DNA of 64,000 bases from Perna viridis (lineage: Eukaryota): assembly GCA_037379345.1 (NCBI GenBank), contig CM074513.1, positions 60,181,195-60,245,194 on the forward strand. The letters run 5' to 3'. Both the position numbers and the translations under genes were made by a program. Position 1 is the first letter of the stretch, and every line of letters begins with the position of its first letter. The notes under the pieces were generated by a model. The model saw only the letters and a list, made by a program, of their open reading frames with translations. It was not told the origin of the DNA and searched no databases. This document shows positions 6,196 to 64,000 of this stretch, in pieces.

Positions 6196-6197
6196 CT

Positions 6198-8024: not shown

Positions 8025-8076
8025 GAAGATCGCCTTTTTGGATGCTCATAAAGGGCATCCGAAAAAAGTCTCCCCT

Positions 8077-8935: not shown

Positions 8936-8997
8936 CTTCTTTTTTTAACGCCCATTCCGAACCGCGTCTTAGCGCCGATCAGGGGTCGGACGATTTT

Positions 8998-9426: not shown

Positions 9427-9434
9427 TTATGTAA

Positions 9435-9645: not shown

Positions 9646-9661
9646 GTCTGCAAGCCGATCT

Positions 9662-10122
9662 GATGGAGTGTGGTGAATGCGAGTGTGCGTGCAGACATGA
9701 GGTGGAAGATGAGGCGTGCCCAAAATGCGGCGTGGTGTGGCTCGGGTATAGCTTTGCCCAGGATGACGTCGAAACACTGGGAAAGTATAATAGCAGACCT
9801 CGTCCCCCACCCCACCCCATGCGGTCAAATGACGACGAGAGGGCATCCATGCCCGCTTCCCTGTGGGGGAGGTAAAGACGTATGCCAGAAGCACTTCAAC
9901 CTCTCTCAGAAGGCACGCTGCCAGCGAATGCTCAAGACCGGAAAGATCTGCCTGAAGAATTGCCCCCAAGGAGCTATCGCTTGCCGCCGGCATGTACGCT
10001 CGAACGCTCCCCAGAACGCCCCGGAAAACGCAAACTCTCCCTCAAACGCTTCCCCGGACGCCTACGCTCTCTCACGCTCAGAGCGTATCGCGTGGGCAGC
10101 CAAGTACGACCGATGGTGGTAA
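9662..10122 (+). pseudogene. Cys-rich Polinton accessory protein (CxxC ribbon plus two C..C..CxxH fingers)
   Basis: MECGEC..CPKCG, then after a frame change CGQMTTRGHPC..CQKH and CQRMLKTGKIC..CRRH. Confidence 0.5.
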
Positions 10123-10182
10123 AGTCGTCTGCCTTTTCGGATGCTCCTGGGGATTCGAAAAGTCGTACGCATCCCTATAAAA

Positions 10183-10545
10183 ATGAGCGTCATCAAGATC
10201 ACGATCAAGGAGCAGCGCGATGCTCTGGCCAAGGAGATGCACGCTCTCAGGCAGAATATCAAGGCAAATAGCATGAGAGACCGCCTTGAGAAGCAGAGGA
10301 TCACACGTGACCTCACCAAATTTTTCAAGCCCGTGGTGGAAGCGCAGGAGAAGGCCGCCACCCAGATCACTAGAAAGATCGACGATATTCCTCTTGCGCC
10401 TCCAGCCCTTTTACCCCACTACCTCCCCAGTTTGCCGATCCACCACTGCCCATCCCTCTGACTACCGATACCATCCTCGGACCGCGTGCGCAGCACTATC
10501 TGCAGCTGAGCATGACCAATCAGGCTGATCACGTCTTCGGACTGC
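10183..10545 (+). pseudogene. Polinton hypothetical coiled-coil protein, truncated
   Basis: TATAAAAATG start; MSVIKITIKEQRDAL..LTKFFKPVVEAQ..; after a frameshift, GPRAQHYL..DHVFG. Confidence 0.55.
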
Positions 10546-10632
10546 TAGCTCGCTACCCTAGCGAAGCACAAGGGGAATATCCACAATCTCATCGCAGGCG
10601 CAGGCATCGCTCACGTGCGCTTCTATAGATAA

Positions 10633-38632: not shown

Positions 38633-39871
38633 GATTTTTTTTTATCAAAATCCTTAGTACATGTACATCTCTTTATAGTCAAGTTTCTTAAAAAGTTCAT
38701 AATGATATATAGGATGCTTGAAAAATATTTCGGGCCGCGCATCAATATTGTGCGACACCTCCTTCAAGTTGATGCAATTAGAACGCGGTTTCTCAAAAAC
38801 GTGAGCCGCGAACAATGACTTCTAGACCCGGCATAATAATTAGATACACTCACCTATTTCCGATATCCATATCTTATTGAAAAATATTCTGTTTCTGACA
38901 AACGGATTAGAGATGATGTATTTTCTTAATGTCTACCATTGATTAACTTTCTGAAATTTTTAATAATCGTATTATTATTTCATCTTGAATTTTACGTACA
39001 AATGTATCTTCCCCAGGAAGTTCAAGACTTATATTGAAGCTCGTGGCTTGGATTTACTTTTTTTTTATTGTATTTACCGATTTTGACCGGTGGTAACTTT
39101 ATGCTGCCCAATTGTGTTAAAATATAACGGAAATAATTATTCGCAATAGAAACGGAAGGTTTATATACAGTATATATAGCGCTAAAATAACCTGGTTTAA
39201 TCCACCTTTCACTTTTGAAATGCCTGTACCAAGTCAAGTTCATTATGGTGGTGTATCATTCTGTTTTTTTTCCTGTTTTACGGACTTTTTATCAGTACGG
39301 TATTTTGTCATTACCTTGCACTTGACTTCTTTCGTGGGTAACTTTTGTCCGGTTGAGAAATATTTTGGCCCGGACCTCAAAATTAGTAATAAGTCCATAT
39401 TTATTCTTCGCACCTGCAGTTATTAAGATATTAACATCCTTTATTGTTGACCAAACATCTATATATTAATGTACTTAAATATACATATCATGAATCTACA
39501 AATAGAGATTTATTATATATCCTCAATTACTAGATCTTTAAACCTCTAATAAAACAATCCAGACACGTTTTATGGAAAATATCATCTGTTTGTAATCGTT
39601 TTATGAGAGAATGTTTCTAACTTTTGTTTACTATATAATAAACTGTTAACATTCTGTTGGATATATCACTGTTGATCTATAGATAAAGTTAAATCGGATG
39701 CTATTACTTTAATAACAATCCTGTTACAGTAACAATCTCATCCGTGTTTAAATGCATGTAAACAACTTCGCGGTATTTTTTGTTGAAAATTAAAATTCGC
39801 GTGGAGTAAAATACAAATATCGAGTGAAAGCAGAGTGTTTATATTGAAATAGAATCCACTAAATCATCACA

Positions 39872-40282
39872 ATGAGAGGTTTTCTTCTTCAGAGGAGACA
39901 TTCTTGGCATGCTTTTTCAAAGGCAGGAACGAGTGATTCCAAACTAACGAAACGTCGACGGTTTTCGTTGGCGGCGAATATCAGTTCCGATTGTTCCCAA
40001 TCGTATCTCTCTAAAAATGGTCGTCGGTTTTCTTTACCGTTTGTGCCCACTTTACACAGACAGTCCGTCCATGTAGGGGAAGTTATTTTTGAGGAAGATA
40101 GGAGTAGCCTTTTAGATGAGGAAGAGGAAACCGAAGCGAAGAGGAGAACTATGAAATTTGACACTTCGATAACTGGTGACCATTTAACTAAACTAATAAT
40201 TTTAACATTGTTTGTTTGTGTTGTGAGTGTTTCAGCTGTATTTTATTCGCTCTATAATGTGATTCAAAAACCAATCTGGTAA
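39872..40282 (+). CDS. Putative tail-anchored membrane protein (136 aa) with multiple PKA consensus sites; paralog of 47867-48292
   Basis: Intact ORF; N-terminus MRGFLLQRRHS; RRHS, RRFS twice, KRRT; single C-terminal TM (LIILTLFVCVVSVSAVFYSLY). Confidence 0.75.
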   Translation: MRGFLLQRRHSWHAFSKAGTSDSKLTKRRRFSLAANISSDCSQSYLSKNGRRFSLPFVPTLHRQSVHVGEVIFEEDRSSLLDEEEETEAKRRTMKFDTSITGDHLTKLIILTLFVCVVSVSAVFYSLYNVIQKPIW

Positions 40283-40859
40283 CCACTGAATTATCAACTG
40301 TATTTTTCTTCAACTTATTTTATTTTAAATTAATTGTTTTGGTTTAAATTGTCATATGAGAATCCCGTCGGAGCTTCTACCGATGTTTATAGATCACGTG
40401 GTGTACCTATTGGATTGTTTCGATATAAATATAAAGAATGTCACCGACATTTAGGCACATAATTTATATTGCCGCCGAAACAAAACGAAAGGTTGTTTAT
40501 ATCGACAGTAATATGATTGTGGTTTACTATTGTCCGTCAGTGCGTCCACACATTGTACATTTTAAAATTTACGAATTTTTTTTACGGATTTTAGTTGGTA
40601 CTATTTTTGTCATCATGAGAGATGAAAATGTTGTTTCTTCGTGTTATTTATTTTTGAGTTATGAACTTTAAATCCTGAAAGAAGGAAACAGAAATGTCAT
40701 GTGCTTTAGCGTAGCTGAGAGTAAATTATTTGTAAATTCTACTCGAGAGTCATGGTCGTTTTCTTAAAACCTCGTTGACATAACAACTTAATTATACATT
40801 AATCTTTTGTTAAATACTGGCAAGAGCCTCAAAACAGAAGAAAAATTTAGAGACATCAG

Positions 40860-41640
40860 AATTAAAAGCAAAACGACAAAAAGACAGCACGCAAAAGCTA
40901 AATTCCTGGCATAATGAACCTTTAAAAAACGGAAGTGACATCAGGTGCCCCGAATGGGTATACATGTCCTCCTCGGCTAACGGCACCCCTCACATTGCAA
41001 GTGAGTTATATCCGATGAGCGTCAAGTTCGGTGGGTAGTCAATCCGGTAAGACGTGAAAACGAACCAAATTATAATGGCAACAATAAAACTTATGTAGTA
41101 ATGATGATAGTCGCAAGATTGAACATAACCCTTTCTTAGAGGCTTATTCAACAGTATATTTGTTATTCAAGGAAACACGACAGTAACACTTCAACTGTGA
41201 AATGCATACTCCATTGGCTGGAGATGTTTGGTATATTGCCAGTAAGGAAGGGCAAATGAACAACTGGAATGTCAAAACATCGCTTTTGTCATAATTTTGA
41301 TTTCTAACTATCGATGTCGTCAATGTGCATGTATATGCTAAGATCTAGGTGTGAAGCAGTTGAAAGTGTTAGTTGTCTCATAATTTCGAGTTTATTCGAG
41401 TATATCAAATGTAAGTAATCCTTGAAGTTTACTCAGAGATAATACATCATCAATGTAATGGAAACGAATATTAAATGATTAGGCAATTCGTATCACTTCT
41501 TTTCTGTAGTATCATAAAACTCAGTTTCATACGAATTTGGTGCACAGTTTTTTCCCAGAGGTTTTCCAATGGTCAATTGGAACACATTTCCTCTCAACTT
41601 GACTAAGTATTGTTGATCAGAACATTTTAGCAACTACAGA
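40860..41640 (-). mobile_element. Older, highly degraded Penelope-like fragment
   Basis: Diverged matches to the RT motifs (FRFHYIDDVLSL, YLDL, NIPN) and to the 3' UTR. Confidence 0.55.
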
Positions 41641-41985
41641 CCTTGATTGCTTCTAGTGAGAATCATTGCAGTTTTTTTTTCACACTATGAGCCTTTAATT
41701 TCCTCTACCTAATACTTGATATCTTCTAGTTCCCTTTTTTTTAAGAAACATTGGTAAATAAGTACTTTTAGCCGTCTTGTGGAAGTGTAGTCTACAATTT
41801 TGAAATATAAGTTTCTGTACTATTACAAATGGTAATTCTATCACACGAGAGATGCTCCTTAATGTGCTAAAGTATTTTGAAATTTTGAGAACCCATACAT
41901 AATTCACGCCACTTGTAGAGTTGGCTTTTCGACGGTATCTCTTACAATTCACCCTTCCCTGTTATGGCGTATGAGTAAATTAGTT

Positions 41986-42590
41986 AGAAAGAGTAATCAA
42001 CGGAACCAAAATTCTAGCGGAAATCAAAATAATTTAATCCAGGGACAAAGACCAGACATGGAAAACAGACAAACAAAACAAAGAATATAAAATAACTAAA
42101 AAAATACATACAAAGTAACAAAAGGAAATGAACAACTCGGACTCCACGAAAAACTGGGAGTATGGACGAGTTGCACCGGTAGGGTAAGCGTCCTCTGCTT
42201 TTCTAGAAACACCCGCTGTTGAGTAAATCAGTTTTCATGGCGCAGATGGATACATCGTAACGATCCACGAGTTCTTGATGACGACCATAAAACTTTTGTA
42301 GTGATGACTTCAATCTTGTAGTGACATTACCCTGTTCCAGAAGCCAAATTGTAAGAAGTCTAGCGCGATACAAAAAGTCTGCGTAGTTACGACAAGCTCT
42401 GGCATAACGAGTTGTGATATGAAAACTCCATACGCAGGTGCTGAAGGGATGTTGCCATAGATGAAAGGAAAGTTGACAATTCTGAATGAAAAGTGATCAC
42501 GTTTGTCGTAAAGTTTGGTCAATAGTTTTCCTTTACCATCGATCTCTAAGTGTAGGTCAAGATATGAGGCTGACTTCACAGTGTCTGTAG
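41986..42590 (-). mobile_element. Penelope-like (Naiad-type) 3' fragment
   Basis: TDTVKSASYLDLHLEIDGKGKLLTKLYDKRD..NIPSAPAYGVFISQL plus the 3' UTR. Confidence 0.88.
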
Positions 42591-44449
42591 AAGCTTTGAA
42601 AAGGGGTTTAGTTGTGCCCAGCAATATATCCTGTTTGTAACGACACTTTTGAAGTTCTGGTAATCCAACAAATGGAAACGACAGCCATGTCAAAAGAAAT
42701 TCAAAAGAACGTAATTGTTAAATATGTCCTCCATATTGCTAAACGAATATTTTGGGTTGTCAAGACCCATTTCCTTAATAAAGCTGTCAATTTATTTTCG
42801 TTTGCACACAAATACTATGTTGTTAAGAGCTTTGTCTGCCGGTGCGACGACGAATTTGTCATGGCGATTTGACATCTATTAAACCTTAGGACGGGTTTTA
42901 TACCATATACATGGTTTTCCAAGGCGTCATTTTCAATTTTATAGGCGTTATTCAATTAGAAAGTAGAAAAAGACATGGTGTAACACAATAAATGCACCGC
43001 TGTATAACCTTTATAAAAATAGTAAATACTACCAGATCACCAAAAAGTCTTTAATAATTATAAACAGTGTCGTGACTTCTTCTCATTCTCTTTTAGCCCA
43101 TTTTAGGAATATTCCACAACTGTGTCCATTACAATTTTGCTGTTTTGTTTCCGGATGATACATTTATGTGGGGGAGTGGTTATTTTAGACCCTTTGCAAG
43201 TTTATCTTGCAATGAATAATTATCAACAGTACTTAGATCACCAGTGAAGACATGTCCAGCAGGACTATAATTGAATGGCGAAGAGGAACAGACACATTAA
43301 GGTGGTCTGGGCTTAACGTCATTGTTAGAGTTCGTGCAATACCTTTTTATTATTGAAAACTGTGGCTGTAATTGGTTTGATTTTAAAACTGAGTGCAATT
43401 AATAGGACCACGATCAGACATACACAAGAAGTTTTTAATAAACATACAAAACCCAAAAACGAAAAAGCAAACCATATCTATAAAACCAAAATAAAAAATA
43501 CGCCTCAAAATCAAGCATTTGGTAATGCCCAATTATTTCCGGTATTTCGCTGCCTGTAATCAGTATAACATATTGATTCAACTTGTATCCAATTAAAAAG
43601 AAGACATATGTTCCTTTAAGGTCAAGCATCACCCTCACCCACGGACCAGTGTACCCCGGACACATTTCACCATCCAGTCTCAATTTCATCTAAGCAGTCA
43701 CATTACCATTGAAGGGTAATAACAAATTACCGAATTGATAGGCAAATTCTGGGCAATAGTCAAAAGAATGAAGGTCCATAGAATGGCATTATGAAGGCAA
43801 AAAAAAAAAACCACCCGTAATGGTTCTGACTTGGTTAGGTATTTCCGGTTGAAATGGTACTTAAACCAGATTTAATAGCACGCAAAAACTAAGAATTTTT
43901 AACTTTTTTAAAGAATGTTTATATGTGAATGAAAAAAAACAAAAGAGGCCGGAAAAAGGAAACACAAAACGATGAAACGGAAACAAAATTTCTAGTAATG
44001 ATATTTTTTGTTTATAAAATTAGTTATCATTGCTATTGACACTTCCGTAAGTCGAGGATACTTCCTTTTTTTATGTGTTTGTCATAACGTCGAGGATAAA
44101 ACCAAGCTCCGAAATAGCGTCTGACGTTCAAAACACTCTAGACGTTGCAGCAAGCCCTCTCAGAAAATGCAAGAATATTGCAAAGTCAGGATAAAGTGAA
44201 CGATTTTAGGCGGCGTTATTCGATTGTCAAACGACGTTAATAATGTCTGAGAATTCCAAAAGGAAACTGACGACTGCCGCTGCCTGGAGCTTGGGATATT
44301 TCCTATTTTGTTGTGCATGCCGCGCGGACGTCACGGATATTCCATATTTTGATGTCTATGTTGTTATCATCATATTAGTTGCATATGAATCAGGCATTGC
44401 TTTTTGAGTGTTTAACATTTTATGAATATGTTTTATATATCACTGAGAT

Positions 44450-45150
44450 TGAATCAATCTCTGTGGCCCTCTGTAGTTTTGCATCCATTTCTGAGGCCCG
44501 CTGTTGTAATGAATCCATCTCTGTAGTCCCGCCGTGGTAATGAAACCATCTCTGTGGCCCCGCTGTGGTAGTGAAGCCATCTCTGAGGCCCCACTGTGAT
44601 AATGAATCGATCTCAGACTGTGACCCGCTGTAGTAATGAATCCATCTCTGTGGCCCCGCTGTAGTAATGAATCCATCTCTGTGGTCCCGCTGTAGTAATG
44701 AATCCATCTCTGTGGCCCCACTCTAGTGATGAATCCATCTCTGTAGCCTCGCTGTGGTTATGAATTTATCTCTGTGGTCTCGTCGTGGTAATGAATCCAT
44801 TTCAGTAATGAAGCCATCTCTGTGGCCCCGCTGTGATAATGAATCGATCTCAGACTGTGACCCGCTGTAGTAATGAATCCATCTCTGTGGCCCCGCTGTA
44901 GTAATGAATCCATCTCTGTGGCCCACTCTAGTGATGAATCCATCTCTGTAGCCTCGCTGTGGTTATGAATTTATCTCTGTGGTCTCGTCGTGGTAATGAA
45001 TCCATTTCAGTAATGAAGCCATCTCTGTGGCTTCGTTGTGGTACTGTATACATCACTGTGGTCCCGATGTGGCCTTGCTCTGGTAATGAATCCTTCTTTT
45101 TTGTCCCGCTGTGGTAATGAATCCACCTCTGTGGTCCTGCTGCTGTAATT
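44450..45150. repeat. 31-bp minisatellite (ATGAATCCATCTCTGTGGCCCCGCTGTAGTA)n
   Basis: About 22 units, with an internal higher-order duplication. Confidence 0.92.
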
Positions 45151-45509
45151 TCTACTGTAGATTAATTAGTTAAGCACAAAACGATTGATTTGGCCCCGTT
45201 TAGTATTGTGAAACTGGTTACTTCATTACCGTAAAGAATTTCTTTTAGATTTGGATAAATCTATTTCTGTTATCATAAATGCCTTTTTTTTCATTTTCAT
45301 CTGACATGAAATCAACAGGGATTTGGTTGGTGTTTCTATAAGACGCAGAGGGTGCTTTCCTATCGATTGGTCCATGCTCCTGTTTAAGAGTAAGATGTTA
45401 GCTCAGATTTGGCTGGCTTTTTATAATAAAAAAAAAGGCACCATGAAGATTATTTGTTCTAAAAGACAAAAGAGAGACCCACTCTTGACAATAGAAAGCC
45501 ACATAAGTT

Positions 45510-46900
45510 GGCTGGAGAAAGCCTAGTCACAATCACATGGTTATACAGACTCCATTCAACTATATATCGGATACTTCGTCCTATAACTCTCATAGACTGT
45601 CATGCCCGAACGTTTGATAGAACTGATAATGCGTGTAAAAAACTGAAACGTAACTTGCACTCACTACACACCGTAGGTGTAAACTCGAATGGCATGTGAC
45701 AGGTGGCAAATACCGTTGTATGGAAACGTGTAATTTTACCTACAGCTCTTTTCGGATGTGAACATTGGGGTCATTTGAACAAAACTGAAACATCTATGTT
45801 GGAACAGACTCAAAGATACTTTACTCGTTTTATATTGTGTTTTGACAAACGTTCACCAAGTGCTTCTTCAGTAAATAACTTAGGACTGTGGTCTATAGAG
45901 GGGTTGATAGACAAATTTAAAACGTTATTCTTTGGTCGGTTGTGTAGAGCGTCGGTAACGACAACTCATAAACAGTTATTTAACCTTAGGCTTGCAGATG
46001 TAATTTCTGGCAAACCTGACAAATCATCTTTGACTTACGATCTCATTCGAACTTGATTGAAATATGATATGTCAGCATTCCTTGAGCACTTCATTGAAGA
46101 AACTTTCATTCCGGACAAGAGACTTGGGTCAAAAGTCGTAAGTCAAATAATAACTATTTATGAAGAAAACAAGTGGAAATTATTGGTACAACAACGACCT
46201 GACCTTTTGGCGATATTTCAAAATCCACCATTCTTTAAGAGAACACAGATTGATTAGACTTTGTCGCAAGCACCATTGCAAACGCAATGAACTTATGGTA
46301 TTAACTTATCTAGGGTCGCTACCTATTATAAGTGGACAATGCTGTTTGTGACCGATTTACTGACGACATAGTCAAATATCCCATACTTCATTGTGAATCG
46401 CTTATGAATGATAGAAACTCAATGTTTTACGGCATTGTAGACTTACTCCAGTACACGATTCAGTTAAATTATTTAACCAAAAGGATGATAACATTCTTAT
46501 AACATTCCATGGTGGCATTTCCGAATTTGCTAATGAACTAGACTCTGACATATGGTACCAGCTAATGCTATGCATCGCAGGTCACATAAATAAATTGTAC
46601 ACTAACTTCAGGAAAGTTATTTTTGAGTTATGATTCAATACTAGTATTTAACATTCAATTACATTTGTACATGTAAGTGTATCATACTCAATATATGCTA
46701 CCTAAAATTGTGTATTATCTACTCTTTTTTAATGCAGTATTGTTTACATGGTATAAAAGGTATTGCATCAGTTTGTGTATATATGTGTGTGTAGTTTTCT
46801 ATTTTGTCAAGTGATTTTTGTATTATATTTGTGATTTTTTTTTCTTGTTTTATGAATCGTCATCTTTTGGTGGAAATAAAGAAAATCAATCAATCAATCA
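45510..46900 (+). mobile_element. 3' fragment of a decayed LINE
   Basis: VILPTALFGCEHW..QRYFTRFI..FFGRLC; ends in AATAAA and (AATC)n at 46875-46900. Confidence 0.7.
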
Positions 46901-47866
46901 TAGTTCGGACGAGCCATTTACAGACATATAGTTCGGACGAACCAAGACATTAAAATGAAACAAATTGATTTAGAAATATATTAAAATGCAAATCAAAAGT
47001 ATCGGAAATAAAAAAAAAAACACAATTGTGAAATGAACGGCCACTCATATTTGAATGTGTTGATAAAGGTGTGACGTAGCAGGAACGAATATACTTGGTA
47101 ACCGTAACATAACGACACATTGGTTATCAACAAAACGACTATAAATCAATTCAAAATTACAATTGCTATCTCGACTATTAGTGTCAGTCTCTCTGTGGAA
47201 TGTCAATACATTTAAAACGAAATCAGTCTGTTCATCACTAAATATCTCTACTAAATAGAAGAAGTAGGAACACTGAGATGTGAACTTTTTTTGAGATATC
47301 GATATACACGGAGTGACCAATAGCATGTTTGTTGGTATTTAAAAAAAGCTGAATCAAATAACGCTGCACACCAATTAGTCAGTTCATTCGAATTTAACAG
47401 TTTTAATAATCATTTAATTGTTGACTCTTTCACAGGCGACAGTATTGTTTAAGAGAGAACAATGAAGCGGAACGACCTTTAATGAACAATTAGTGTTCGG
47501 TTGTCACTCAGTGGTGGAGACATGTACTTATGTTCTAAGATTTAATTGTCCCTGATCGACATTCTGCAAAGTTTTATTGCCATACAAGGAAATAAAACAG
47601 CGTAAATATAGACTCCAATCTGCATTTCAAACTGCTAGTACTAAAACAAAAGGATGTTCTATAGAATCTGTGAAGCTGTAGAAATCACTAATTCTCCAGT
47701 GATTACTGAGATTACATCAACTCAGGAAATTTCTTCTGCATAGTCTTGACAAATGGCATTTCATTATGGAGCTCATGTTTACATTATTTCCTGCCTGGAA
47801 TTAGATTGTTGACTTTAAACAGAATTTTCTTTACAGAGATATTCTTCAGTGACTTCTGTGTGAACG

Positions 47867-48292
47867 ATGAGGAATTACATTCTACAGAGAAGACGGTCGA
47901 GTGTTGCTCTCAGTGATATCACTGAAGAAAACTTTGATGGAAGCCGCCGACGTTCTAGTATAGTTGCAAACGACGTTGCTGCATTTAGAAACGACATGGA
48001 GCGACGTCGTCGATCGTCGGTTTATCTAGGACCAAGTGGAAGTAAAGTTCACCCCGCTGCTGCCAGAAGACCATCTATTTGTAAAGAACCTGAATTTATG
48101 GAGTATCGTGAAATGGTCGAAAGCCACAATCTTCCGAATGGAGACATGGGAAAGTTCCGAAGAATGTCTATAGAGATTGAAAACATGGTTGCAGATGACA
48201 GCTTGAAAAACTTTCTGGTAACAGCTATTTTCATTACGATGTTTTTGGTCAGTGTTATTGCATTTTCTATTTACCAAAGACTTGGAACATGA
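47867..48292 (+). CDS. Putative tail-anchored membrane protein (141 aa) with five RRxS clusters and a phospholamban/sarcolamban-like C-terminus
   Basis: Intact ORF; splice acceptor TTTTCTTTACAG at 47825-47836; MRNYILQRRRSS; C-terminus RRMSIEIENMVADDSLKNFLVTAIFITMFLVSVIAFSIYQRLGT. Confidence 0.8.
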   Translation: MRNYILQRRRSSVALSDITEENFDGSRRRSSIVANDVAAFRNDMERRRRSSVYLGPSGSKVHPAAARRPSICKEPEFMEYREMVESHNLPNGDMGKFRRMSIEIENMVADDSLKNFLVTAIFITMFLVSVIAFSIYQRLGT

Positions 48293-50492
48293 AAAAAAAT
48301 TCAGTCGAAATAGAAACGAGTTACTAAATATTACATGCTTTATTTAGGCAATTGAGCTAATTGCAGAAGATGGTGTATATAAATTAGCTTGCCAACTCTC
48401 ATACAATAGTGAAGTCATTTATTATGAATTAGTAACGAATGCGGAATATAGATTATTTCAGTGCTAAAACATCTTTGTGCAACAGATGAAAACACTTTTC
48501 ACTTCAATGTACAAAATAGCAGACGGATGTGTTTTGACGTACTTTATCGACTATCGTAAAAGTGATCTAGACGCAATGCGTTAATGCAGACGAACTTGTA
48601 AGTCGCGCCTGTACATAGCGGGTATAATATAACAAGGACAATATATTGTAGTGTGTTGACAACTTGTAAAGTGTGTTATACTCCATAAGAGTTATTTTTG
48701 TAATGAATGATTTGTTTTGACTTATTTTTAACATAAAATAACCAGCTACTAATCATATGTATGAGACCAGAGCTCCAAATACAACCAAAGAAATAATCTT
48801 TCAGAACCCATCAATTCTAAAATATTCATATCTAATGTACATTTGTACCAACTTTCATGAGGCGAAAAAAAAAGGGCACCTAAGCATGACAGACGACATA
48901 ATTAAAACCTAAACGACAGTAATATTTTCAGGGAAAGGTATAAAATAAGTACAACACATGTAAAGTTTCGTTTTCTGAGTATGTTCTGTCAAGATTAAAT
49001 TATGGATAAGTGCCTGTATGAGCTAGTAGCCATTATTTACTGTGCCGTCGCTGCCTGTGATGCGAGCCTTTGGGTCAAGGTTGTACGAAATACGTCTCAT
49101 GCGCTGCCTGAAAAATATATTTTCGATATCCACATCTTATTGAGAATATTCTTTTTCTGACAAAAAGGTAATAGATGGTGTATTTTCATATCATAAATAT
49201 CTTCTGTGCTGTCTACTAAATTTGTTCGTTAACAGTTTTGTGCTGCCTGTTAGTATTACAAAATACGGGAAAGAAAACCAATTAACCGGAAGATTTAGCG
49301 TTATAAAACCTGGTTGAACGCGTCATTTACATCAGACATTGCTGTACCAAGCCAGGACCATTGGACTTGTTTACGACGTATTTTTGCCTTTATGTTGCCA
49401 TTTGTTATATGAACTTACCCTTTGACTATTGCCTACAGTTAAGCAGTGTTGATCTTGTTCATACCCTTTATTCTAAGGGAGCAGCTATCTAGATTTAATA
49501 AGGAGAAGGTGGGGTCATTCTGCCATGTGTGATCTGAGTGAACTATAAATTATTCATCCTGTCCTTTGTGTTTCTAAAACCAACTCATCCTGGAATTTCC
49601 ACGTGATTTCTAGTAATATATTATTATTCAAACAGGGCATCATAAACCTAGTACACCTGTCAATATGTTATGTAGGTTGCACTTTGATATAATGTTGTTC
49701 TATCTATAAACCCAACAAATCTAAAATAATAGTCGCTACTTAAAATGATTATAATATCCCCTTGTTATCTGATAACTTTAACATATCCTACGGTCCATCA
49801 AAAGTCACACAATATAATAATAAACAACACCGAATATATTAGCAGTTGATAACATACATTTGGTATTTAAAGATATAATTGCTTTGTACAATCATCTCCG
49901 TCCTTTCCCAGTAATAACAAAAAGGTGAAAGTTGTCTCTGATTGACACTTTGATGGTATAACTGACATTAATCACCTTTCAAACATGGATGAATTTCAAG
50001 CTTTAATGAGACATTGTCATGTTTATTAAGTCGCAGTTCATGTGACTGTATTTCATACCTTCAGTGACGGTTATTTAATACAAATTGAAATTTAATTTGT
50101 ATATTGATGATTTGAATAAATGTGCTTTATTAAAACATAAATCATGAAAATGCTTTCGAAGATATTTATTAAATTACAAAAGAATCTTGGTACAAGGTGA
50201 TTTTTACAGACTAAATCATGATAAACTTCACTACTCAGTTCATGTATTTGGAAAGCTGTATCACTTCTATACCAATAAATCAACAGTAAATGTGTAGTTC
50301 TGGAAGCACCATTCAGTTTGTGTATTCCTCGACCCTCGTCCGTTTCTGTCCGACCTTACACTTCCCCTTTCGCTTCAATCATGCACTCGATTGAACCCTA
50401 GACTTTTTGCCCTTCAAATACACGCTTTCAAAAGTTCTACTCTAATTCAACAAATTTGAAATCACAAAATCATTAAACTCAAATGTGGGGTA

Positions 50493-53400
50493 TTATTCAG
50501 GAGATGGACACCGAATTAGAAGTGGTGTTTCTGTGTGATAATGACCAAGTCTGGCTGATTTTATACACTGTTCCTGCTTCCACAACGGCAAGTGATAAAA
50601 ATCTGATCTGGTCATTTTCATAACTTCCTTAAAATGTCTTTCTGTTAAGTGAAACTGCAAATGAATAAATTCATAAGTTATTTTAGGTTATGGTATTTCT
50701 TTCCTGTTTCGCAAAAAAAAAAAACTTTTAAAATTGTGAACTGCATTTTATTGCTATGAAGAAACAATCGTAGAAGTGGAACAGTCAATTGGAAGAAAAG
50801 TTTAGTCACTAGAAATATAAAAAAAATATCTTTCGTAAGATTTATTTGTATCATGAGAATCAACTCCATTTGTGAGTTGGCCCCGTGCAGGTCCGGGTGT
50901 CAAAAGAATAGGCCTGCAGCAGTGCTAACCTTGTCGTAAAAGGCGACTAAATAGTGCTCAGAACCCTAGCTGGGGGCTAGGGCGCTCTGCCCACAGAGCA
51001 ATTGGGATGTGTGCCCCAGGTGGTAGAATGGGGTACCCCCTGGCGTGTTACATGCTGGGGTTGTCAGGCTATAATACGGAAAACCTGACCGCAAACCATA
51101 GTGGTGCACCGTCTTGGGAAAGATGCCACGTTCCTCGCACGTTAAAGACCCCGACTGTGGTATTCTCCCGGAGTAGGAACCATAGGGCTCCGCCACAGGA
51201 GGCTAAATTGCCCGACCCTATTCTGTTCTCCCTATTTCCAGTGGCAATCAAAATTTGTCGACCCCATTATCCTTGTGTCCCATATTTATTTTGCATTTCA
51301 TCTTCATTTCATTTGGGGTTTAACGCCTGAATATAGCTGAAATTTTGCTGCTCGGGCGTTAAACCCCAACAATCAATCAATCAACCAATTGTGAGTTCGC
51401 TGTTTGACATTACCATGGACATGTTAGCTGCAGTGAGACCAGCTGATGTTTTTCTGGGGAAGACAACTTTGTCATGACAGTAGTTGTGTAGTGATTATGT
51501 CAATTTATATACATTACACTGTGTTTTGACTGATAATACGTCCTGTAATAATAACACCATAAAATGACACAACTAATGCAGTCATTATGATCATTATGAC
51601 AGGGTGGCAATGTGACTTGTTACCTCTTTATGACATCGATCAATCTCATCACAGGGATCCTTTCTTATAAGTTCTCGGTATGCGTATTTAGGATATTTTT
51701 GGAAGGTTCTGTCGATAATCTAAAAAATACAATTTACATAATATCTATCCAGCAGAAAAATGTGTAACTTTTTAACAAAAATTATTGAATTTATAACACG
51801 AATAATTGAGGAGACTGGCGATCATAAAATATAGCGAATCCATTTAAAATTTGTGACTGTCAAGAATTGATTGTCGTACTTACTGGGTATGTTGTATAGT
51901 CCTTATCGACAATAAATAGTAAAACTCTAGAACAAAAAAAGGAATTAACAAACCTCTTAGCAGGATAGTCACTGTACATGTGCGATGAAATATTTATCAA
52001 TTTGTGAATAAAATTTATCAACAAGTGAATATTTCAATTATTCATATAAAAAATATAAATAAACAAATAAGTTTTATTTAGAGTCGACATATAAAACAGA
52101 ATAAGAAACATAAGCTCTGGTAAGCTTTTGAACGACATATTGGGACCTAATGTGGATAAATATTTATTCTCATGTTGATGAATTATACATTGATTTCAAT
52201 AAATTTATAACAAGTAATAGTAAATTGTGTTAGATGCCGGGTTATCAAAGTTGAGTGTCTTTGGTTGATTATAAAGTTGGACCCGAGACATGCAACTGGG
52301 TGTCCAACCACATTATTACATTGTCAATTTATATCAATGATAAATATTCATAATTGATACTTGACCATAAATACTATACCAGAGGTTGACACTTTACAAT
52401 GAAATATTATAAGAAATTGAAAAAAAAAAGATTTTTGGGTTTATTATCAGTCATTACATTTCGCCGATCTCCGATCGCGATTGCCCATTTGGGGTGCGAG
52501 ACATCCTTCTGAAACAGCTTATTTTACTTCAATCATAGCCGTGGAGTTTGCAATTATTTTGAATTATGAGTGTGTTATTTCATATCCATGCACATTCATG
52601 TTCAGATTCCCTACATCTAGGACGTCACTAACTCAGCAGGTAATTACGTGGCATAGGAACTTGCCTCTTGATCGACATCAATTTTAGCATTCTCTTGACG
52701 AATTCTTTTTCTAGTCGCATTGTAGACCTCGTCTCCCTGGAATAAAAATAACTTTGGATAATAATAGGCTAGAATTGTTATTGTACTATTGTTATCCCTG
52801 TATGAACCTTTCATGAAAAAAGAACGATACAAATGTACCAGCGTATGACCTAAATCAAAAATAGTAAGTACTTTCATAAATTACCAAAACGTCTGTAAAC
52901 CTTACGTAAAACACACGTTTATGTAAGCTCTGAAGGCCCGGCAATAAAATTAATAAAACCCGCTGTAACAGAAAGGTGACACTTCTTCAAAATCAAACAA
53001 AAAAATAATATATGAAGACACAAAGAAACTCTAATGCCTCCTGACTGAATGCAATCTGTGGTCGGGTTAAATAAGGCCTTATTAACATCTTTTTTATCAA
53101 AAGAGGAGAAAAAACAACAAACAAATATCCCATAAAATCCATTTAATTATACATCCAATACCTCAACATACACCATATAGACAAAATCAGATATCCACTT
53201 AAAGAACGCTCGCAATTACTGAAAGTTAGCTCAGAATATACTAAAGAATGATAATACCATCAAAACTACACACGGGTCAAATAACTGTATTTGTGAAAGA
53301 AAGGTTAAAAAAAAATAGAAAATAATTTGAGCATCGTATCCTTTACGAAAAATTTCTATTACGGGCAGTTGCTAAAACCACAGGAGTTTTGTTTGAAAGA

Positions 53401-59400: not shown

Positions 59401-62400
59401 TATAGTCCACTCATCCATTAAATACAAATAACATTTGTAAATTAACATGTAAAACAAAACACATTGTATGATCGGTTGTAAGAGCAATCAAGGGAACCAA
59501 GGTTATAGCGGTAATCAAAAGAATGTAATCCAGGGACAAAGACCAGACATGGAAAACAGACATACACAACAAAGAACATAAAGGAACTAAAATCATACAT
59601 ATAAAGTAACAAAAGCAAATGAGCAACTCGAACTCCACTAAAAACTGGGAGCATGGACCAGGTGCACCGGTAGGGTAAACGTCCTCTGCTTTTCTAGAAA
59701 CACCCGCCGAGTTGCTCATAAAAAGTCAAGTCCGGGGTAGACAAACGAGGAAAGGAAAACTATGACCCGTTGAATAAGTTTTCATGGTGCTGATGGATAC
59801 ACCATAACGATCCACGAGTTCATGATGACGACCATAAAACTTCTGTAGTGATGACTTCAATCTTGTAACGCCCCGTGCAGGTCCGGGTGTTAAAAGAATA
59901 GGCCTGCAGCAGCGCTAAGCTTGTCGTAAAAGGCGACTAAATAGTGCTCAGAACCCTAGCCGGGGGCTAGGGTGCTCTGCCCACAGAGCAACTGGGATGT
60001 GTGCCCCAGGTTGTGGAATGGGGTACTCCTGGCGTGTTACATGCTGGGGTTGTCAGGCTATAATACGGAAAACCTGACCGCAAACCATACTGGTTGACCG
60101 TGTTGGGAAAGATGCCATGTTCCTCGCACGTTAAAGAATCCTACTGTGGTATTCTCCCGGAGTATGAACCATAGGGCTCCGCCACAGGAGGCTAAATTGC
60201 CCGACCCTACCCACCTCTCCCTATTTCCAGTGGCAATCAAAATTTGTCGACCCCAATGTCCTTGTGTCCCATCCCTTTTTCATTTCATTATCATTTCATG
60301 TTCATTTCCTCATCAATTTCATGTTCATCGTCTGAATATAGCTGAAATATTGCTGCTCGGACGTTAAACCCCAACAAACAAACAAACAAACATCAATCTT
60401 GCAGCACAATAACCCTGTTCCAGAAGCCTATTTGTTAGAGTTTTAGCGCGATACAAAAAGTCTGCGTAGTTTCGACAAGCTCTGGCATAATTTATGAGTT
60501 GTGATATGAATACTCCATACGCAGGTGCCGAAGGGGTGTTGCCACAGATAAAAGGAAAGTTGACAATTCTGAATGAAAAGTCATCACGTTTGTCGTAAAG
60601 TTTGGTCAATAGTTTTCCTTTACCATCGATTTCTAATTGTAGGTCAAGATATGAGGCTGACTTCACAGTGTCGGTAGTATCCTTTACCTCAAGTTCTTTT
60701 GGGTAGATGCGATGTATCAAATCCCCGAAATTAGGATTGTTTAAAGATAATACGTCATCTATATAGCGGAAACTGAGATTGAAGGATCTAGCCAAACGAT
60801 ATTCTTTCTTTCTGATCAGATCAGCTATAAAGTCAGCCTCATAAGAGTGAAGGAATAGGTCAGCAAGTAAAGGAGCACAATTTGTTCCCATTGGAATGCC
60901 GACCGTTTGTTGAAAAACACGTCCACCACACTGGACAAATATGTTGTCGATTAAAAATTCAAGCATTTTGTTAACATCTTCCTCTGTATATTTGGAAGAT
61001 GATTGGGAATTATTTCTTACAAAGTATGAGGAATCTCTACCAAGAACTATATATTTGTATCTAGGTGTACCATCTTTTTTGGAAAAACAACGATGTATAA
61101 CGTTTTTAACTCGAGATTGTAACTGAGTATGGGGAATAGAAAAATATATTGTTGAAAAATCATAGGTTTTAATGCTATTATATTCAGATAATAGTCTTGA
61201 ACTGATTGTCTCCAAAAGATCTTTCCACATTAAATTGATATCATTACGGGAGTAACAAGCGTTGTGGTAGGAGTGCAGACCCTCTTTGACAGTTGTGAGT
61301 ATAGAAGTTAAAAGTTCTGAAAGTTTTTGTTTTGGTGGTACATTTTGCAGTTCCACCTATGAAACGTTGTTTGTATGGATTCTTGTGGAGTTTAGGAATC
61401 CAGTACATAGATGGTAAATCACAATCATCGTCCTTGGTAGAGAGACCAAAAGAGGATAGCACAGATTTATGGTTTTCCACAATCACTTCTTTGGAGAGAG
61501 TGGTAGCAGTATAGGTCTTATCACTGCTATTATTTTCTACGTCTACCTCTGATAATAAACATTGGATGTAAAACGTTTTGCAGACAAAAACAATGTTGTT
61601 TTGGGCTTTGTCTGCTGGTACGACAACATATTTTTCATGCATAGTAGACAATGTTTTTGCTACATCGGGGTCTTTGAAAACTGGTGTAGCCTTGGCACTC
61701 ATTGACCTACTTAAAACTTTCATTCGTTTGAAAATTAAAGACCTCACGGCCTTTAACCAGTCTGCCAGAGTATCAATGTCTTCTTGTTCTCGTTTTATCC
61801 ATTTTCTTGCATAGTCCTACAAATTATTTAAAAAAAAAAATAAACCATTTTTCCTTATCATTTCAAAAACAAAATAAAATATTGTAAACCCTATAATTGC
61901 TGAAAAAAGTAAGTTACCTATGTAACCTATACTGTACGTCAATAGTAATATACCTACGTTACCTATACCGTGCGTCAATAATAATTTACCTATGTTACCT
62001 ATACCGTACGTCTTTAGTAAATCTCATATGTTACCTATACTGCACTTCTCCAGTCATTTACCTAAGTTACATATATTGTACGTCTATAGTAACTCTCCTG
62101 TGTTAGCTATATTGTATTTCTCTAGTATCTTACCTATGTTACATATACTGTATTTCTCCAGTAATTTACCTAAGTTACCTATACTTTACTTCACCAGTAA
62201 CTTACCTATGCTTCCTATACTGTATTTCTCCAAATATTTACCTATGTTACCTATAATGTACTTCTCCAACAACTTACCTGTGTTACCTATACTGTCCTTC
62301 TCTAGTATCTTACCTATGTTACATATACTGTATTTCTCTAGTCACTTATCTATGTTACATATACTGTATTTCTCCAGTAATTTACCTGTATTACCTTATT

Positions 62401-63513
62401 TTACTTCACCAGTAACTTACCTATTATATTGCCTATACTGAACTTCTCCAGTCACTTACCTATGTTACCTATACTGTATTTCTCCAGTAATTTACCTGTG
62501 TTACCTATACTGTACTTCTCTAGTGTCTTACCTATGTTACATATATTGTATTTCTCCAGTAACTTACCTACGTTACATTTACTGTACTTCTCCAATAATT
62601 TACCTGTTACCTATACTGTAGTTCTCCAGTAACTTACATATGTTACCTTTACTGTACTTTTTCAGTAACTTACCTATATGTGTATGTCACCTATACTGTA
62701 CTTCTCCAATAACTTATCTATGTTATCTATACTGTACTTCTCCAGTTACTTACCTATGTTACCTATACTGTACTTCTTTAGTAATTGTCTGTGTTTTGTA
62801 TCTTTTTCTCTCCATTCGTTAAATATTTTCTTGAATGTAATAGGTTCATGATCTTCCATAATTCGACAAATTGACTGGTGAGAAGGGTATCCATTATGTT
62901 TATTGAATGCCTGAGAAAAAAATATAGGCTAATATAGAAATGTGTCGAAACAAATCAAACCCATTGTTTCCACCTTCAACTCTGAAACTGGTAACTATGA
63001 CGAATTGACAAAATAACTAAATTCTTTATTCGCCCCTTATCATTGAATAAGAAATAATCTAATTCTAATTTGTTGTATGTGAACAGAATAATAGTTGATT
63101 TAGTATAGGAATCTTTAATCAAATTTTGCACGGAGTTATTTGTATTACATAACAAGATGCTAACTTCATTTAAATATTGAAACTTTGTGCGAATTATTTC
63201 AACCTTCAAACTTTTGAATGATGATAAATCTTCAGTATATTAAACTGTCAATAATAAAACATATTTTGTCACTTAACACAAAAAATTACAATAATTTTAT
63301 CATTAATCATTCTTCACTTTAATACAAATCAATTGATCTTGTTTTAATTAATACAATTCTCATTTGTTTATATACCATCACAGAATAAATTAGTTATATG
63401 TTTTTTTTTACCTTGCCTCGTTTAATACCATTCATCGCTGCATTCTCATTGGCTAGTGATCCAACCCAAACATATAGAGGACATGACGGCCCTGTATCTA
63501 AAAGGTAGCTATC
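50493..63513 (-). CDS. Villin/advillin-like protein (gelsolin repeats 3-6 plus headpiece); 5' part lies beyond the window
   Basis: 17 phase-consistent exons (545 aa): 63412-63513, 62754-62910, 59143-59240, 58769-58906, 58351-58437, 58098-58163, 57733-57822, 55612-55695, 55326-55387, 54597-54696, 54251-54337, 54076-54120, 53857-53922, 53498-53623, 52665-52736, 51624-51719, 50493-50654. Motifs DSYLLDTG..YVWVG, IWRVE..GSCYIVL..YYWVG, GKEPTHF, SLNS..WYGK, IFIWIG, HEPETF..W, HLTE..LPLWKQ. Confidence 0.93.
50879..51388 (+). mobile_element. SINE-like element, copy 2 (last intron of the villin-like gene)
   Basis: TSD TTGTGAGTT at 50870 and 51389; (AATC)n tail. Confidence 0.9.
56000..56185. repeat. 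Short ~45-bp tandem repeat (about 4 units)
   Basis: CTTGTCATC.ATTGGTTGGTAATTGTCGCGG.TTAATTCCTT repeated. Confidence 0.8.
57370..57622 (-). mobile_element. Short HINE/MITE-like element in a villin intron
   Basis: AACAAG start, GGACGGAC motif, terminal CCCC..GGGGGACAAAAA hairpin. Confidence 0.5.
59481..61820 (-). mobile_element. 5'-truncated Penelope-like element (Naiad-type RT, no C-terminal GIY-YIG) in a villin intron
   Basis: VVVPADKA, YWIPKLHK, TYDFSTIY, GIPMGTNCAPLLADLFL, FRYIDD; SINE-like copy 3 is inserted near the ORF end. Confidence 0.92.
59870..60392 (+). mobile_element. SINE-like element, copy 3 (nested in the Penelope-like element)
   Basis: TSD TCAATCTTG at 59857 and 60393; (AAAC)n tail. 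Confidence 0.9.
61910..62790. repeat. 36-bp minisatellite derived from a villin exon 3' end plus its splice donor
   Basis: (TTACCTATGTTACCTATACTGTACTTCTCCAGTAAC)n, about 24 units; the last unit overlaps exon 62754-62910. Confidence 0.92.
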
Positions 63514-64000
63514 CTAGAACAAAGATATAGAGGACATGACGGCCCTGTATCTAAAAGGTAGCTATCCTAGAACATGACGGCCCTGTATCTAAAAGGTAGC
63601 TATCATAGAAAATGACGGCCCTGTATCTAGAAGGTAGCTATCCTAGAACAAAGATAAAGAGGACATGAAGGCCCTGTATCTAAAAGGTAGCTATCCTAGA
63701 ACAAAGATATAGAGGACATGACGGCCCTGTATCTAAAAGGTAGCTATCCTAGAACATGACGGTCCTGTATCTAAAAGGTAGCTATCCTAGAACAAAGATA
63801 TAGAGGACATGACAGAACTGTATCTAAAAGGTAGCTATCCTAGAACAAAGATATAGAGGACATGACGGCCCTGTATCTAAAAGGTAGCTATCCTAGAACA
63901 AACATATAGAGGACATGACAGAACTGTATCTAAAAGGTACCTATCCTAGAACATGACGGCCCTGTATCTAAAAGGTAGCTATCCTAGAACAAACATATAG
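63470..64000. repeat. 53/38-bp tandem array derived from a villin splice acceptor plus the exon 5' end
   Basis: CTAGAAC(AAAGATATAGAGGAC)ATGACGGCCCTGTATCTAAAAGGTAGCTATC repeated at least 10 times; runs off the end of the window. Confidence 0.92.

What the first reader, a model, noticed from the sequence alone, without database searches (positions are those of the whole stretch)
39872..48292. Two paralogous tail-anchored multi-PKA-site proteins: candidate long phospholamban-like regulators
Seen: two intact, co-oriented ORFs 8 kb apart among decayed repeats. They share an N-terminus (MRGFLLQRRHS / MRNYILQRRRS), similar length (136 and 141 aa), a likely disordered body with 4-5 RRxS/T clusters, and one C-terminal TM ending FYSLY / AFSIY. 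The second ends RRMSIEI-x8-LKNFLVTAIFITMFLVSVI. Established: phospholamban has RRASTIEM..LQNLFINFCLILICLLL, and PKA phosphorylation relieves its inhibition of SERCA; cAMP/PKA relaxes bivalve catch muscle. Inference: an undescribed family of membrane-anchored cAMP-effector microproteins, possibly SERCA or channel regulators with graded multisite phosphorylation.
Basis: partly seen in the sequence, partly recalled or inferred. Interest (0 to 1): 0.85.

Follow-up and report, generated by a model that had tools for sequence, protein, structure and literature searches.

The report
Conserved tail-anchored multi-phosphosite protein gene pair
Two small neighbouring genes are real, expressed and conserved between this mollusc and mussels; they encode membrane-anchored proteins studded with conserved kinase-target motifs, an uncharacterised family that resembles phospholamban only in layout, with no detectable homology.

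Summary
ORF1 (39872-40282, 136 aa) and ORF2 (47867-48292, 141 aa) are intact, co-oriented, distant paralogs (26% identity). Both are real genes. Orthologs of the same length occur in other species, including Mytilus galloprovincialis VDH99482.1, named only 'hypothetical predicted protein'. dN/dS is about 0.04-0.12, and cross-species DNA similarity stops at the ORF boundaries. ORF2 is transcribed as one unspliced + strand mRNA of about 1.2 kb in four RNA studies. An ORF1-type ortholog shows a transcript-like unspliced contig of about 1.5 kb in another species. The order ORF1-type, ORF2-type, convergent villin is conserved in Mytilus and a third species, so the duplication is ancient. A probable third paralog lies 24 Mb away. 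RRx[S/T]-hydrophobic motifs occur 3-5 times per protein against about 0.1 expected. Their columns are much better conserved than the linkers. The juxtamembrane and TM segment is highly conserved in both clades and is the most conserved part of ORF2. The proteins are tail-anchored. The phospholamban reading is not supported as homology: there is no Pfam or PDB match at E<=10, the 'LKNF' Asn is K/R in orthologs, and the size is 2-5 times that of regulins. A regulin-like mechanism stays possible but untested. This is an undescribed family; function is inferred.

The parts
39872..40282 (+). ORF1-type gene CDS (136 aa, stop included): tail-anchored protein with 4 basophilic sites
   Evidence: ORF. 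(orthologs P0007 99%, P0008 75%). (dN/dS 0.07; DNA similarity to the sister-species contig L012 runs exactly 39872-40282). (61% to Mytilus copy A).
40193..40255 (+). ORF1 transmembrane helix (residues 108-128), followed by an 8-residue tail NVIQKPIW
   Evidence: Kyte-Doolittle 2.47. (S-x-Y at the helix end conserved).
39537..39597 (+). Short upstream block conserved with the sister species, 275-335 nt before the ORF1 ATG; candidate promoter or 5'UTR
   Evidence: 75% over 61 nt; the only similarity outside the ORF.
47457..47605 (+). Upstream block conserved with the sister species; it spans the 5' ends of the RNA contigs, so candidate core promoter plus start of the 5'UTR of ORF2
   Evidence: 74% over 157 nt. 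(contigs start at 47509, 47518, 47540).
47509..48775 (+). ORF2 transcript: unspliced, about 1.17-1.27 kb; 5'UTR about 358 nt with six uATGs, 3'UTR about 400-480 nt
   Evidence: colinear contigs 47518-48683 (X1), 47509-48669 (X4), 47540-48775 (X7), no joints. Stranded raw reads of X21 have the first mate on the - strand here and on the + strand over the - strand villin exon. Depth is zero at 46970-47363. (uATGs).
47867..48292 (+). ORF2-type gene CDS (141 aa, stop included): tail-anchored protein with 5 basophilic sites; in-frame TGA 6 nt upstream of the ATG
   Evidence: (orthologs 61-79%, 136-139 aa). (dN/dS 0.03-0.12). (Mytilus VDH99482.1).
48158..48169 (+). Membrane-proximal site RRMS (residues 98-101; Ser101 lies 15 residues before the TM helix), on a predicted short helix
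   Evidence: RRMS invariant in the ORF2 clade; [KR]xT-MKFD in the ORF1 clade. (RRMS, RRIS, RRVS in distant members). (helix 93-108).
48212..48274 (+). ORF2 transmembrane helix (residues 116-136), followed by a 5-residue tail QRLGT
   Evidence: pLDDT 89-97. (Kyte-Doolittle 2.58). (juxtamembrane+TM+tail segment, residues 93-141, pairwise identity 0.86).
50154..50656 (-). Terminal exon of the neighbouring villin/gelsolin-family gene (headpiece domain plus 3'UTR), convergent with ORF2; syntenic marker, not part of the family
   Evidence: PF02209 VHP, E=9e-12. (splice junction at 50656 in all four runs). (same neighbour in two other species, including Mytilus).

Best explanation
Shown:
- ORF1 and ORF2 are genuine protein-coding genes. 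They belong to an ancient tandem cluster beside a convergent villin gene, conserved at least between this species and Mytilus.
- ORF2 is intronless in this species. The ORF1-type mRNA looks intronless in another species, so ORF1 is inferred to be intronless too.
- Each encodes a tail-anchored membrane protein of about 130-190 aa. The cytosolic N-terminal domain is rapidly evolving and probably disordered. It carries 3-5 strongly conserved RRx[S/T]-hydrophobic motifs, the PKA/PKG-class consensus.
- The last motif lies 15 residues before a highly conserved TM helix that ends in an invariant S-x-Y.

Inferred: the TM and juxtamembrane segment docks on an integral-membrane partner (pump, channel or transporter) in the ER/SR or a related endomembrane. 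Multisite phosphorylation of the cytosolic domain by a basophilic kinase switches or grades that interaction. This would be a kinase-controlled regulatory subunit, analogous in logic to phospholamban or phospholemman but not detectably homologous to them. The partner is unknown.
For: Real genes:
- Same-length orthologs at 61-79% (ORF2) and 75-99% (ORF1).
- dN/dS 0.03-0.12 with saturated dS, and DNA similarity confined to the ORFs.
- Only 12 relatives among 1.84 billion cluster representatives, all with the same architecture.

Expression:
- Unspliced + strand RNA over ORF2 in four studies, with a spliced, opposite-strand villin exon as internal control.
- Contigs carrying the ORF1-type ortholog share 5' and 3' ends across independent runs.

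Age and synteny:
- Same gene order in ctg45934 and in Mytilus UYJE01001145.1.
- The ORF1-type and ORF2-type clades each have 98/98 support.

Motifs under selection:
- Enrichment against shuffles is below 0.0005 in most members.
- Motif columns 0.80 and 0.76 pairwise identity, linkers 0.50 and 0.44.

Membrane segment:
- Juxtamembrane+TM+tail identity is 0.86 (ORF2 clade) and 0.71 (ORF1 clade), more than a passive anchor needs.
- AF2 gives low confidence for residues 1-90, a helix at 93-108, a break, then a TM helix at 111-140 with pLDDT 89-97.
- Tail-anchor geometry.
Against: - No phosphorylation, membrane insertion, localisation or partner was observed; all function is inferred from sequence.
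- RNA depth is low in the one raw-read run, and no tissue information was available.
- The ORF2 5'UTR holds six uATGs, which would damp translation.
- There is no direct RNA evidence for ORF1 in this species.
- Arg-rich clusters could serve another role, such as Arg-based ER retention or lipid binding.
- The AF2 model rests on only 12 sequences.
Confidence: 0.6

Rival explanations
1. One reading: long phospholamban-like regulins. The TM helix binds the M2/M6/M9 groove of SERCA and inhibits it. PKA phosphorylation, above all at the membrane-proximal RRMS/KRRT site, relieves the inhibition in a graded way.
For: - Tail-anchored topology.
- A conserved RRxS site on a short helix 15 residues before the TM, then a break, then the TM helix. 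From my own knowledge this resembles PLN's helix-loop-helix with Ser16.
- A very conserved TM, suggesting an intramembrane partner.
- An invariant S-x-Y[Q/N/K] at the luminal end. It faintly recalls the sarcolipin tail RSYQY, which is needed for inhibition (PMC8396278).
- Regulins are so divergent that lack of sequence similarity does not exclude the mechanism.
Against: - No hit to PF04272 or PF05366 at E<=10 for any of 12 members.
- No PLN or SLN chain retrieved from the PDB at E<=10 with the profile or with the 52-aa C-terminal segments. An ABCC2 TM helix scores better.
Asn34/Asn11 is the key inhibitory residue in PLN and SLN.
- Size is 131-189 aa against 28-66 aa for known regulins.
- No tissue or SERCA data.
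Confidence: 0.15
2. A trafficking or scaffold protein rather than a pump or channel regulator. The RRR clusters act as arginine-based ER-retention signals or as acidic-lipid or calmodulin binding patches. Phosphorylation masks them, so it controls the protein's own location or membrane contacts.
For: - Repeated RRR/RRRR clusters in a disordered cytosolic domain of a tail-anchored protein.
- ORF1-type motifs (KRRRFSL, GRRFSLPF) combine basic and aromatic residues, as in MARCKS-like effector regions (my own knowledge).
Against: - The Ser/Thr and the +1 hydrophobic residue are as conserved as the arginines, which points to kinase recognition and not charge alone.
- The near-invariant TM helix is not explained by a trafficking signal.
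Confidence: 0.15
3. Not genes: chance ORFs, transposon-derived ORFs, or conserved non-coding elements that happen to be open.
For: - The ORFs lie among retroelement debris.
- No Pfam domain.
- Many uATGs in the ORF2 5'UTR.
Against: - dN/dS far below 1 with saturated dS, and similarity bounded by start and stop codons.
- Same-length orthologs.
- Only 2 clear copies plus 1 divergent copy in a 723-Mb genome.
- Conserved synteny with villin in three species.
- Sense-strand RNA.
Confidence: 0.02

Closest known systems
Phospholamban (regulin family, Pfam PF04272)
   Same: Tail-anchored single-pass protein. It has a PKA-type RRxS site on a short cytosolic helix about 15 residues before the TM helix, and a strongly conserved TM.
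   Different: - No detectable sequence similarity.
- No conserved Asn equivalent to Asn34.
- 131-189 aa against 52 aa.
- 3-4 additional conserved basophilic sites on a long disordered N-terminal domain.
- SERCA binding untested.
Sarcolipin and insect sarcolambans
   Same: Tail-anchored, with a very short luminal tail. The family-invariant S-x-Y[Q/N/K] at the luminal end loosely recalls the sarcolipin tail RSYQY (PMC8396278).
   Different: - Those are 28-45 aa peptides with almost no cytosolic domain.
- The LFxNF and WLL motifs are absent.
- No Pfam or PDB match.
Another-regulin (ALN) and endoregulin
   Same: These are the longer regulins, with a disordered cytosolic N-terminal region ahead of a C-terminal TM. 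They carry a polar, non-Asn residue at the key TM position.
   Different: - 62-66 aa.
- No repeated RRxS motifs.
- No sequence similarity found.
Phospholemman FXYD1 and IRAG/MRVI1 (from my own knowledge, not tested here)
   Same: Small or anchored membrane proteins whose multisite phosphorylation by PKA, PKC or PKG tunes a partner: Na,K-ATPase for FXYD1, the IP3 receptor for IRAG. This is the same regulatory logic as inferred here. IRAG is also tail-anchored.
   Different: - FXYD1 is a type I protein with the FXYD motif and C-terminal phosphosites.
- IRAG is large and has coiled coils.
- No FXYD or other Pfam family is hit.

Membership tests
Regulins (phospholamban, sarcolipin, sarcolamban, MLN, ELN, ALN, DWORF) | Tail-anchored single TM helix with a very short luminal tail | tested here: met
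   One C-terminal helix with Kyte-Doolittle 2.3-2.9 and 6-14 residues after the 19-residue hydrophobic window in the 12 typical members. P0016 and P0018 show longer C-terminal extensions. AF2 TM helix pLDDT 89-97.
Regulins (phospholamban, sarcolipin, sarcolamban, MLN, ELN, ALN, DWORF) | Sequence membership: match to Pfam Phospholamban (PF04272) or Sarcolipin (PF05366), or to solved PLN/SLN chains | tested here: not met
   No such hit at E<=10 for 12 members, for the family profile against the PDB, or for the 52-aa C-terminal segments.
Regulins (phospholamban, sarcolipin, sarcolamban, MLN, ELN, ALN, DWORF) | Essential Asn (PLN Asn34, SLN Asn11) in the cytosolic half of the TM helix that contacts SERCA Thr805 (PMC8396278) | tested here: not met
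   The only nearby Asn (N115 in 'LKNF') is K or R in the more distant ORF2-type orthologs (retained in P0002) and absent from the ORF1 clade. The polar residues in the helix are Thr or Ser. Other regulins use other polar residues, so this weakens but does not exclude the mechanism.
Regulins (phospholamban, sarcolipin, sarcolamban, MLN, ELN, ALN, DWORF) | Micropeptide size (about 28-66 aa) | tested here: not met
   Family members are 131-189 aa.
Regulins (phospholamban, sarcolipin, sarcolamban, MLN, ELN, ALN, DWORF) | Binds the SERCA M2/M6/M9 groove and alters Ca affinity or Vmax | not testable with these tools
   No eukaryotic SERCA sequence could be supplied unspliced. The species' SERCA gene would have to be joined from exons, and that step was left out.
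Tail-anchored membrane proteins (topological class) | Single TMD near the C-terminus, no N-terminal signal peptide, bulk of the protein cytosolic | tested here: met
   The N-terminus is charged (MRNYILQRRRSS), and the only hydrophobic stretch is C-terminal. Actual insertion was not tested.
PKA/PKG-class (basophilic) kinase substrates | R-R-x-S/T-hydrophobic consensus, conserved across orthologs | tested here: met
   3-5 sites per protein against about 0.1 expected. R8, R9, S11, R28, R29, S31 and S51 are invariant across both paralog clades. Motif columns 0.76-0.80 identity, linkers 0.44-0.50.
PKA/PKG-class (basophilic) kinase substrates | Actual phosphorylation of the sites | not testable with these tools
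   Needs phosphoproteomics or an in vitro kinase assay.
MINAR1_C / UPF0258 (PF06789; a lead from the ESM Atlas) | Match to the Pfam model | tested here: not met
   Atlas score only 0.77. No PF06789 hit at E<=10 for any member.
Transposable-element ORF | Many dispersed copies, TE domains, no stable synteny | tested here: not met
   2 copies plus 1 divergent copy in 723 Mb. No TE domain. Conserved position beside villin in three species.

The most novel reading that the evidence does not exclude
These proteins are a molluscan class of long regulins. They would be tail-anchored inhibitors of SERCA, or of another P-type pump or Ca channel. The TM helix would occupy the regulatory groove, and a disordered arm with 4-5 sites would convert cAMP/cGMP kinase activity into a graded, multi-step release of inhibition. 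That would be the first PLN-type kinase-controlled Ca-handling switch described in Lophotrochozoa, and it would have arisen independently of vertebrate phospholamban.
Probability: 0.15. Interest if true: 0.8.

Novelty: new variant of a known kind. Interest (0 to 1): 0.5.

Why it matters
Small tail-anchored phosphoproteins such as phospholamban and the other regulins are key switches of membrane pumps. None is known in molluscs, where cAMP and cGMP control of muscle and neurons is classic physiology. This work turns a by-eye guess into a defined gene family. The family is conserved, expressed and syntenic. It has precise candidate phosphosites and a TM helix conserved enough to imply a membrane partner. 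That makes kinase assays, localisation, partner discovery and SERCA reconstitution directly feasible. If the partner is an ion pump or channel, this would be an independently evolved, multisite version of the phospholamban principle. If not, it is still an unannotated, lineage-restricted signalling component that current gene catalogues list only as 'hypothetical'.

Tried and rejected
- **Pfam:** scans of both ORFs and of 12 family members at E<=10 gave only noise (PsbN, DUF6353 and others).
- **PDB:** the sequence searches with the profile and with the C-terminal segments gave only noise (ribosomal L3, a designed protein, ABCC2, NdhG).
- **ESM Atlas (two calls):** all scores were below 0.9. 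Hits were unnamed arthropod clusters, MINAR1_C at 0.77 and 'Plekhm3' at 0.81. I treated them as leads and did not confirm them.
- **5'UTR intron:** the acceptor-like site ttttctttacag 30 nt upstream of the ORF2 ATG suggested one. RNA contigs run straight through it and no joints were found, so I rejected it.
- **Earlier notes of this scan:** nothing by place or by words.
- **Literature:** no paper in the library holds the accessions, and the 15 papers listed for phospholamban with mollusc terms include none on a molluscan phospholamban-like protein.
- **Taxon of the distant members** (P0012, P0014, P0016, P0018) and of the window's own organism: the records give sample codes only, so it could not be determined.
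- **Complex prediction:** not used. No eukaryotic SERCA sequence was available unspliced, and I make no binding claim between proteins in hand.
- **Fold search:** not run. The model is a disordered chain plus one helix, and matches would be meaningless.


Full report
**1. Observation**

- They align over their whole length at 26% identity, E=4e-8. Their DNA is diverged beyond easy alignment, so they are old paralogs and not a recent duplication.
- An in-frame TGA lies 6 nt upstream of the ORF2 ATG, so the ATG is the true start of the frame.
- ORF1 carries four basophilic sites: RRHS 8-11, RRFS 29-32, RRFS 51-54, KRRT 90-93.
- ORF2 carries five: RRRSS 8-12, RRRSS 27-31, RRRRSS 46-51, RRPS 67-70, RRMS 98-101.
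- RRx[ST]-hydrophobic occurs 3-5 times per protein against about 0.1 in 2000 composition-preserving shuffles.
- Each protein has one strongly hydrophobic C-terminal helix, with 5-8 residues after it by eye.
- The surroundings are LINE and LTR retroelement fragments and satellites.
- The neighbour on the - strand is the last exon of a villin-type gene (VHP domain, E=9e-12).

**2. They are real genes**

- The 5.8-billion-protein search found same-length, full-coverage orthologs. For ORF2 these are P0002 (79%) and P0003-P0006 (61-66%, 136-139 aa). For ORF1 they are P0007 (99%) and P0008 (75%).
- One cluster member, P0033, is Mytilus galloprovincialis VDH99482.1 / A0A8B6C4X1, named only 'Hypothetical predicted protein'.
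- Against the sister-species contigs, dN/dS is 0.07 for ORF1 and about 0.04 for ORF2. It is 0.03-0.12 for ORF2 against a more distant species. dS is saturated throughout.
- Nucleotide similarity between species runs exactly from start codon to stop codon (39872-40282; 47864-48288). The only other similarity is one short upstream block per gene (39537-39597; 47457-47605).
- Neutral DNA has therefore randomised while the reading frames were kept.

**3. Expression and gene structure**

Fourteen runs from six studies with transcriptome-sized assemblies hold the ORF2 stretch, and one further run is explicit stranded RNA-seq kept as raw reads. I laid four runs from four studies on 45000-50900.
- All four show the villin exon 50154-50656 ending in the same loose end at 50656, a splice junction. 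So all four are RNA.
- Colinear contigs cover 47518-48683 (X1), 47509-48669 (X4) and 47540-48775 (X7). There are no joints, and depth is zero at 46970-47363.
- In the stranded run X21, first mates lie on the - strand over ORF2 and on the + strand over the - strand villin exon. So the ORF2 RNA is on the + strand.
- ORF2 is therefore an intronless gene with a 5'UTR of about 358 nt and a 3'UTR of about 400-480 nt. The acceptor-like site 30 nt upstream of the ATG is not used.
- The 5'UTR holds six uATGs with short uORFs. Depth in X21 is low.
- In another species, five Logan contigs carrying its ortholog P0062 share one 3' end, and three share one 5' end. All are colinear with the genomic contig. 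That behaviour fits an unspliced mRNA of about 1.49 kb and not random genomic contigs. This is an inference.

**4. Age, synteny and family size**

- On contig ctg45934 of another species, the ORF1-type gene (P0062) and the ORF2-type gene (P0031) are co-oriented, in the same order, 29.6 kb apart.
- The VHP exon lies downstream of the ORF2-type gene on contig ctg25437l, which carries the ORF2-type protein P0003 of the same 90%-identity cluster as P0031.
- In Mytilus galloprovincialis UYJE01001145.1 the locus holds two ORF1-type genes, then the ORF2-type gene, then a convergent Gelsolin+VHP gene, all within about 17 kb.
- A maximum-likelihood tree separates the ORF1-type and ORF2-type clades with 98/98 support. 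The duplication therefore predates the split of these species.
- This genome holds only the two window genes plus a marginal third ORF at G000:C3:35890410-35890724 (114 aa). It has KRRTS, RRNS and KRRKS sites, a TM and an end SLYQ. hhalign gives 92% probability, E=5e-7. Its conservation and expression were not tested.
- An exhaustive HMM search of 1.84 billion representatives found only 12 proteins at E<=1e-3.
- The distant ones (P0012, P0014, the P0016 cluster, P0018) keep the same plan:
  - an N-terminal LQRRRSS;
  - repeated RRRSS;
  - RR[MIV]S-x-x-[LF]-E before the TM;
  - a TM ending S-x-Y-[QK].
- Their taxa could not be determined.

**5. What selection preserves**

- In the ORF2 clade, motif columns have 0.80 mean pairwise identity, linkers 0.50, and the juxtamembrane+TM+tail segment 0.86.
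- In the ORF1 clade the values are 0.76, 0.44 and 0.71.
- R8, R9, S11, R28, R29, S31, S51, S134 and Y136 are invariant across both clades and the distant members included in the alignment.
- AF2 on the 12-sequence alignment gives low confidence for residues 1-90, a modest helix at 93-108 carrying RRMS, a break at 109-110, and a confident helix at 111-140 (pLDDT 89-97).
- The membrane-proximal phosphoacceptor lies 15 residues before the TM in both paralogs (S101 to F116; T93 to L108).
- A near-invariant TM helix argues for a specific intramembrane contact and not for mere anchoring. This is an inference.

**6. Comparison with the known**

- No member hits Phospholamban (PF04272), Sarcolipin (PF05366), MINAR1_C or any other Pfam family at E<=10.
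- The family profile and the 52-residue C-terminal segments retrieve no PLN or SLN chain from the PDB at E<=10. An unrelated ABCC2 helix scores best.
- The regulin review (PMC8396278) names Asn34 of PLN and Asn11 of SLN as the critical inhibitory residue, and RSYQY as the essential sarcolipin tail. The family is also 2-5 times longer than any regulin.
- What remains is shared logic: tail anchor, a juxtamembrane RRxS on a short helix, a conserved TM, and an S-x-Y-Q end faintly like RSYQY.
- Regulins are themselves barely alignable with each other. So the mechanism is not excluded, but nothing here supports it beyond layout.
- The literature searches found no description of this family or of a molluscan phospholamban-like protein.

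**7. Verdict**

- 'Phospholamban-like SERCA regulator' is an untested analogy, which I put at about 15%.
- The cAMP and catch-muscle link is speculation. From my own knowledge, catch release is attributed to twitchin phosphorylation.
- The most likely reading is a kinase-controlled, tail-anchored regulatory subunit of an unknown integral-membrane partner.

**8. Limits**

- The organism's name was not available. Its closest named relative sequence is from Mytilus.

Noticed in passing
G000:C3:35890410-35890724 (locus L031:1480-1824, + strand), outside the window: A probable third family member of 114 aa lies on the same chromosome, 24 Mb away. It has KRRTS, RRNS and KRRKS sites and a C-terminal TM ending SLYQLLID. 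hhalign to the family profile gives 92% probability, E=5e-7.
   Followed up: partly
window 47509-47866: The 5'UTR of the ORF2 mRNA holds six upstream ATGs with uORFs of 2-29 codons. This suggests translational damping or control of the main ORF.
   Followed up: partly
L034 (Mytilus galloprovincialis UYJE01001145.1) 1980-2378 and 5580-5972: Mytilus carries two intact ORF1-type genes in tandem upstream of the ORF2-type gene (copy A about 96% to P0009; copy B close to P0011). The cluster has three members there against two in the window.
   Followed up: partly
window 50154-50656 (- strand) and rightwards: This is the terminal exon of a villin/gelsolin-family gene (VHP domain), well expressed in all four RNA runs and spliced at 50656. 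One run (X21) shows a 1-nt deletion relative to the assembly at 50452, in the 3'UTR, in 17 of 17 reads.
   Followed up: partly
window 4000-14000: A GC-rich block (48-55% GC against about 34% around it) holds long ORFs on both strands. One has a chromodomain (8077-8868, -), so it looks like an LTR (chromovirus-type) retroelement.
   Followed up: partly
window 19388-21489 (- strand): LINE-like element: reverse transcriptase (RVT_1, E=1e-30) next to a weak endonuclease/exonuclease/phosphatase match.
   Followed up: partly
window 44450-45031; 61908-62784; 63467-64000: Three tandem arrays: a 31/62-bp satellite between the two genes, a 36-bp repeat with about 24 copies, and a 38/53/144-bp repeat at the window end. 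The long ORFs that overlap the first two arrays are repeat artefacts.
   Followed up: no
window 42310-42693 (-) and 60364-61356 (-): Two fragments of one repeat family share the peptide ...KSASYLDL.LEIDGKGKLLTKLYDKRD.FSFRIVNFPF.... The longer one has a weak RVT_1 match, so these are decayed retroelement copies.
   Followed up: no
P0016 cluster and P0018 (other organisms): In some distant members the called ORF runs 70-135 residues past the TM helix, with variable ends among cluster members (188-287 aa). This may be read-through by the gene caller, an intron after the TM, or a genuinely non-tail-anchored variant.
   Followed up: no
window 49076-49826: In one RNA run (X1), low-depth contigs cover the stretch between the ORF2 3' end and the villin 3' end. 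This may be an extended 3'UTR of either convergent gene or background transcription.
   Followed up: no
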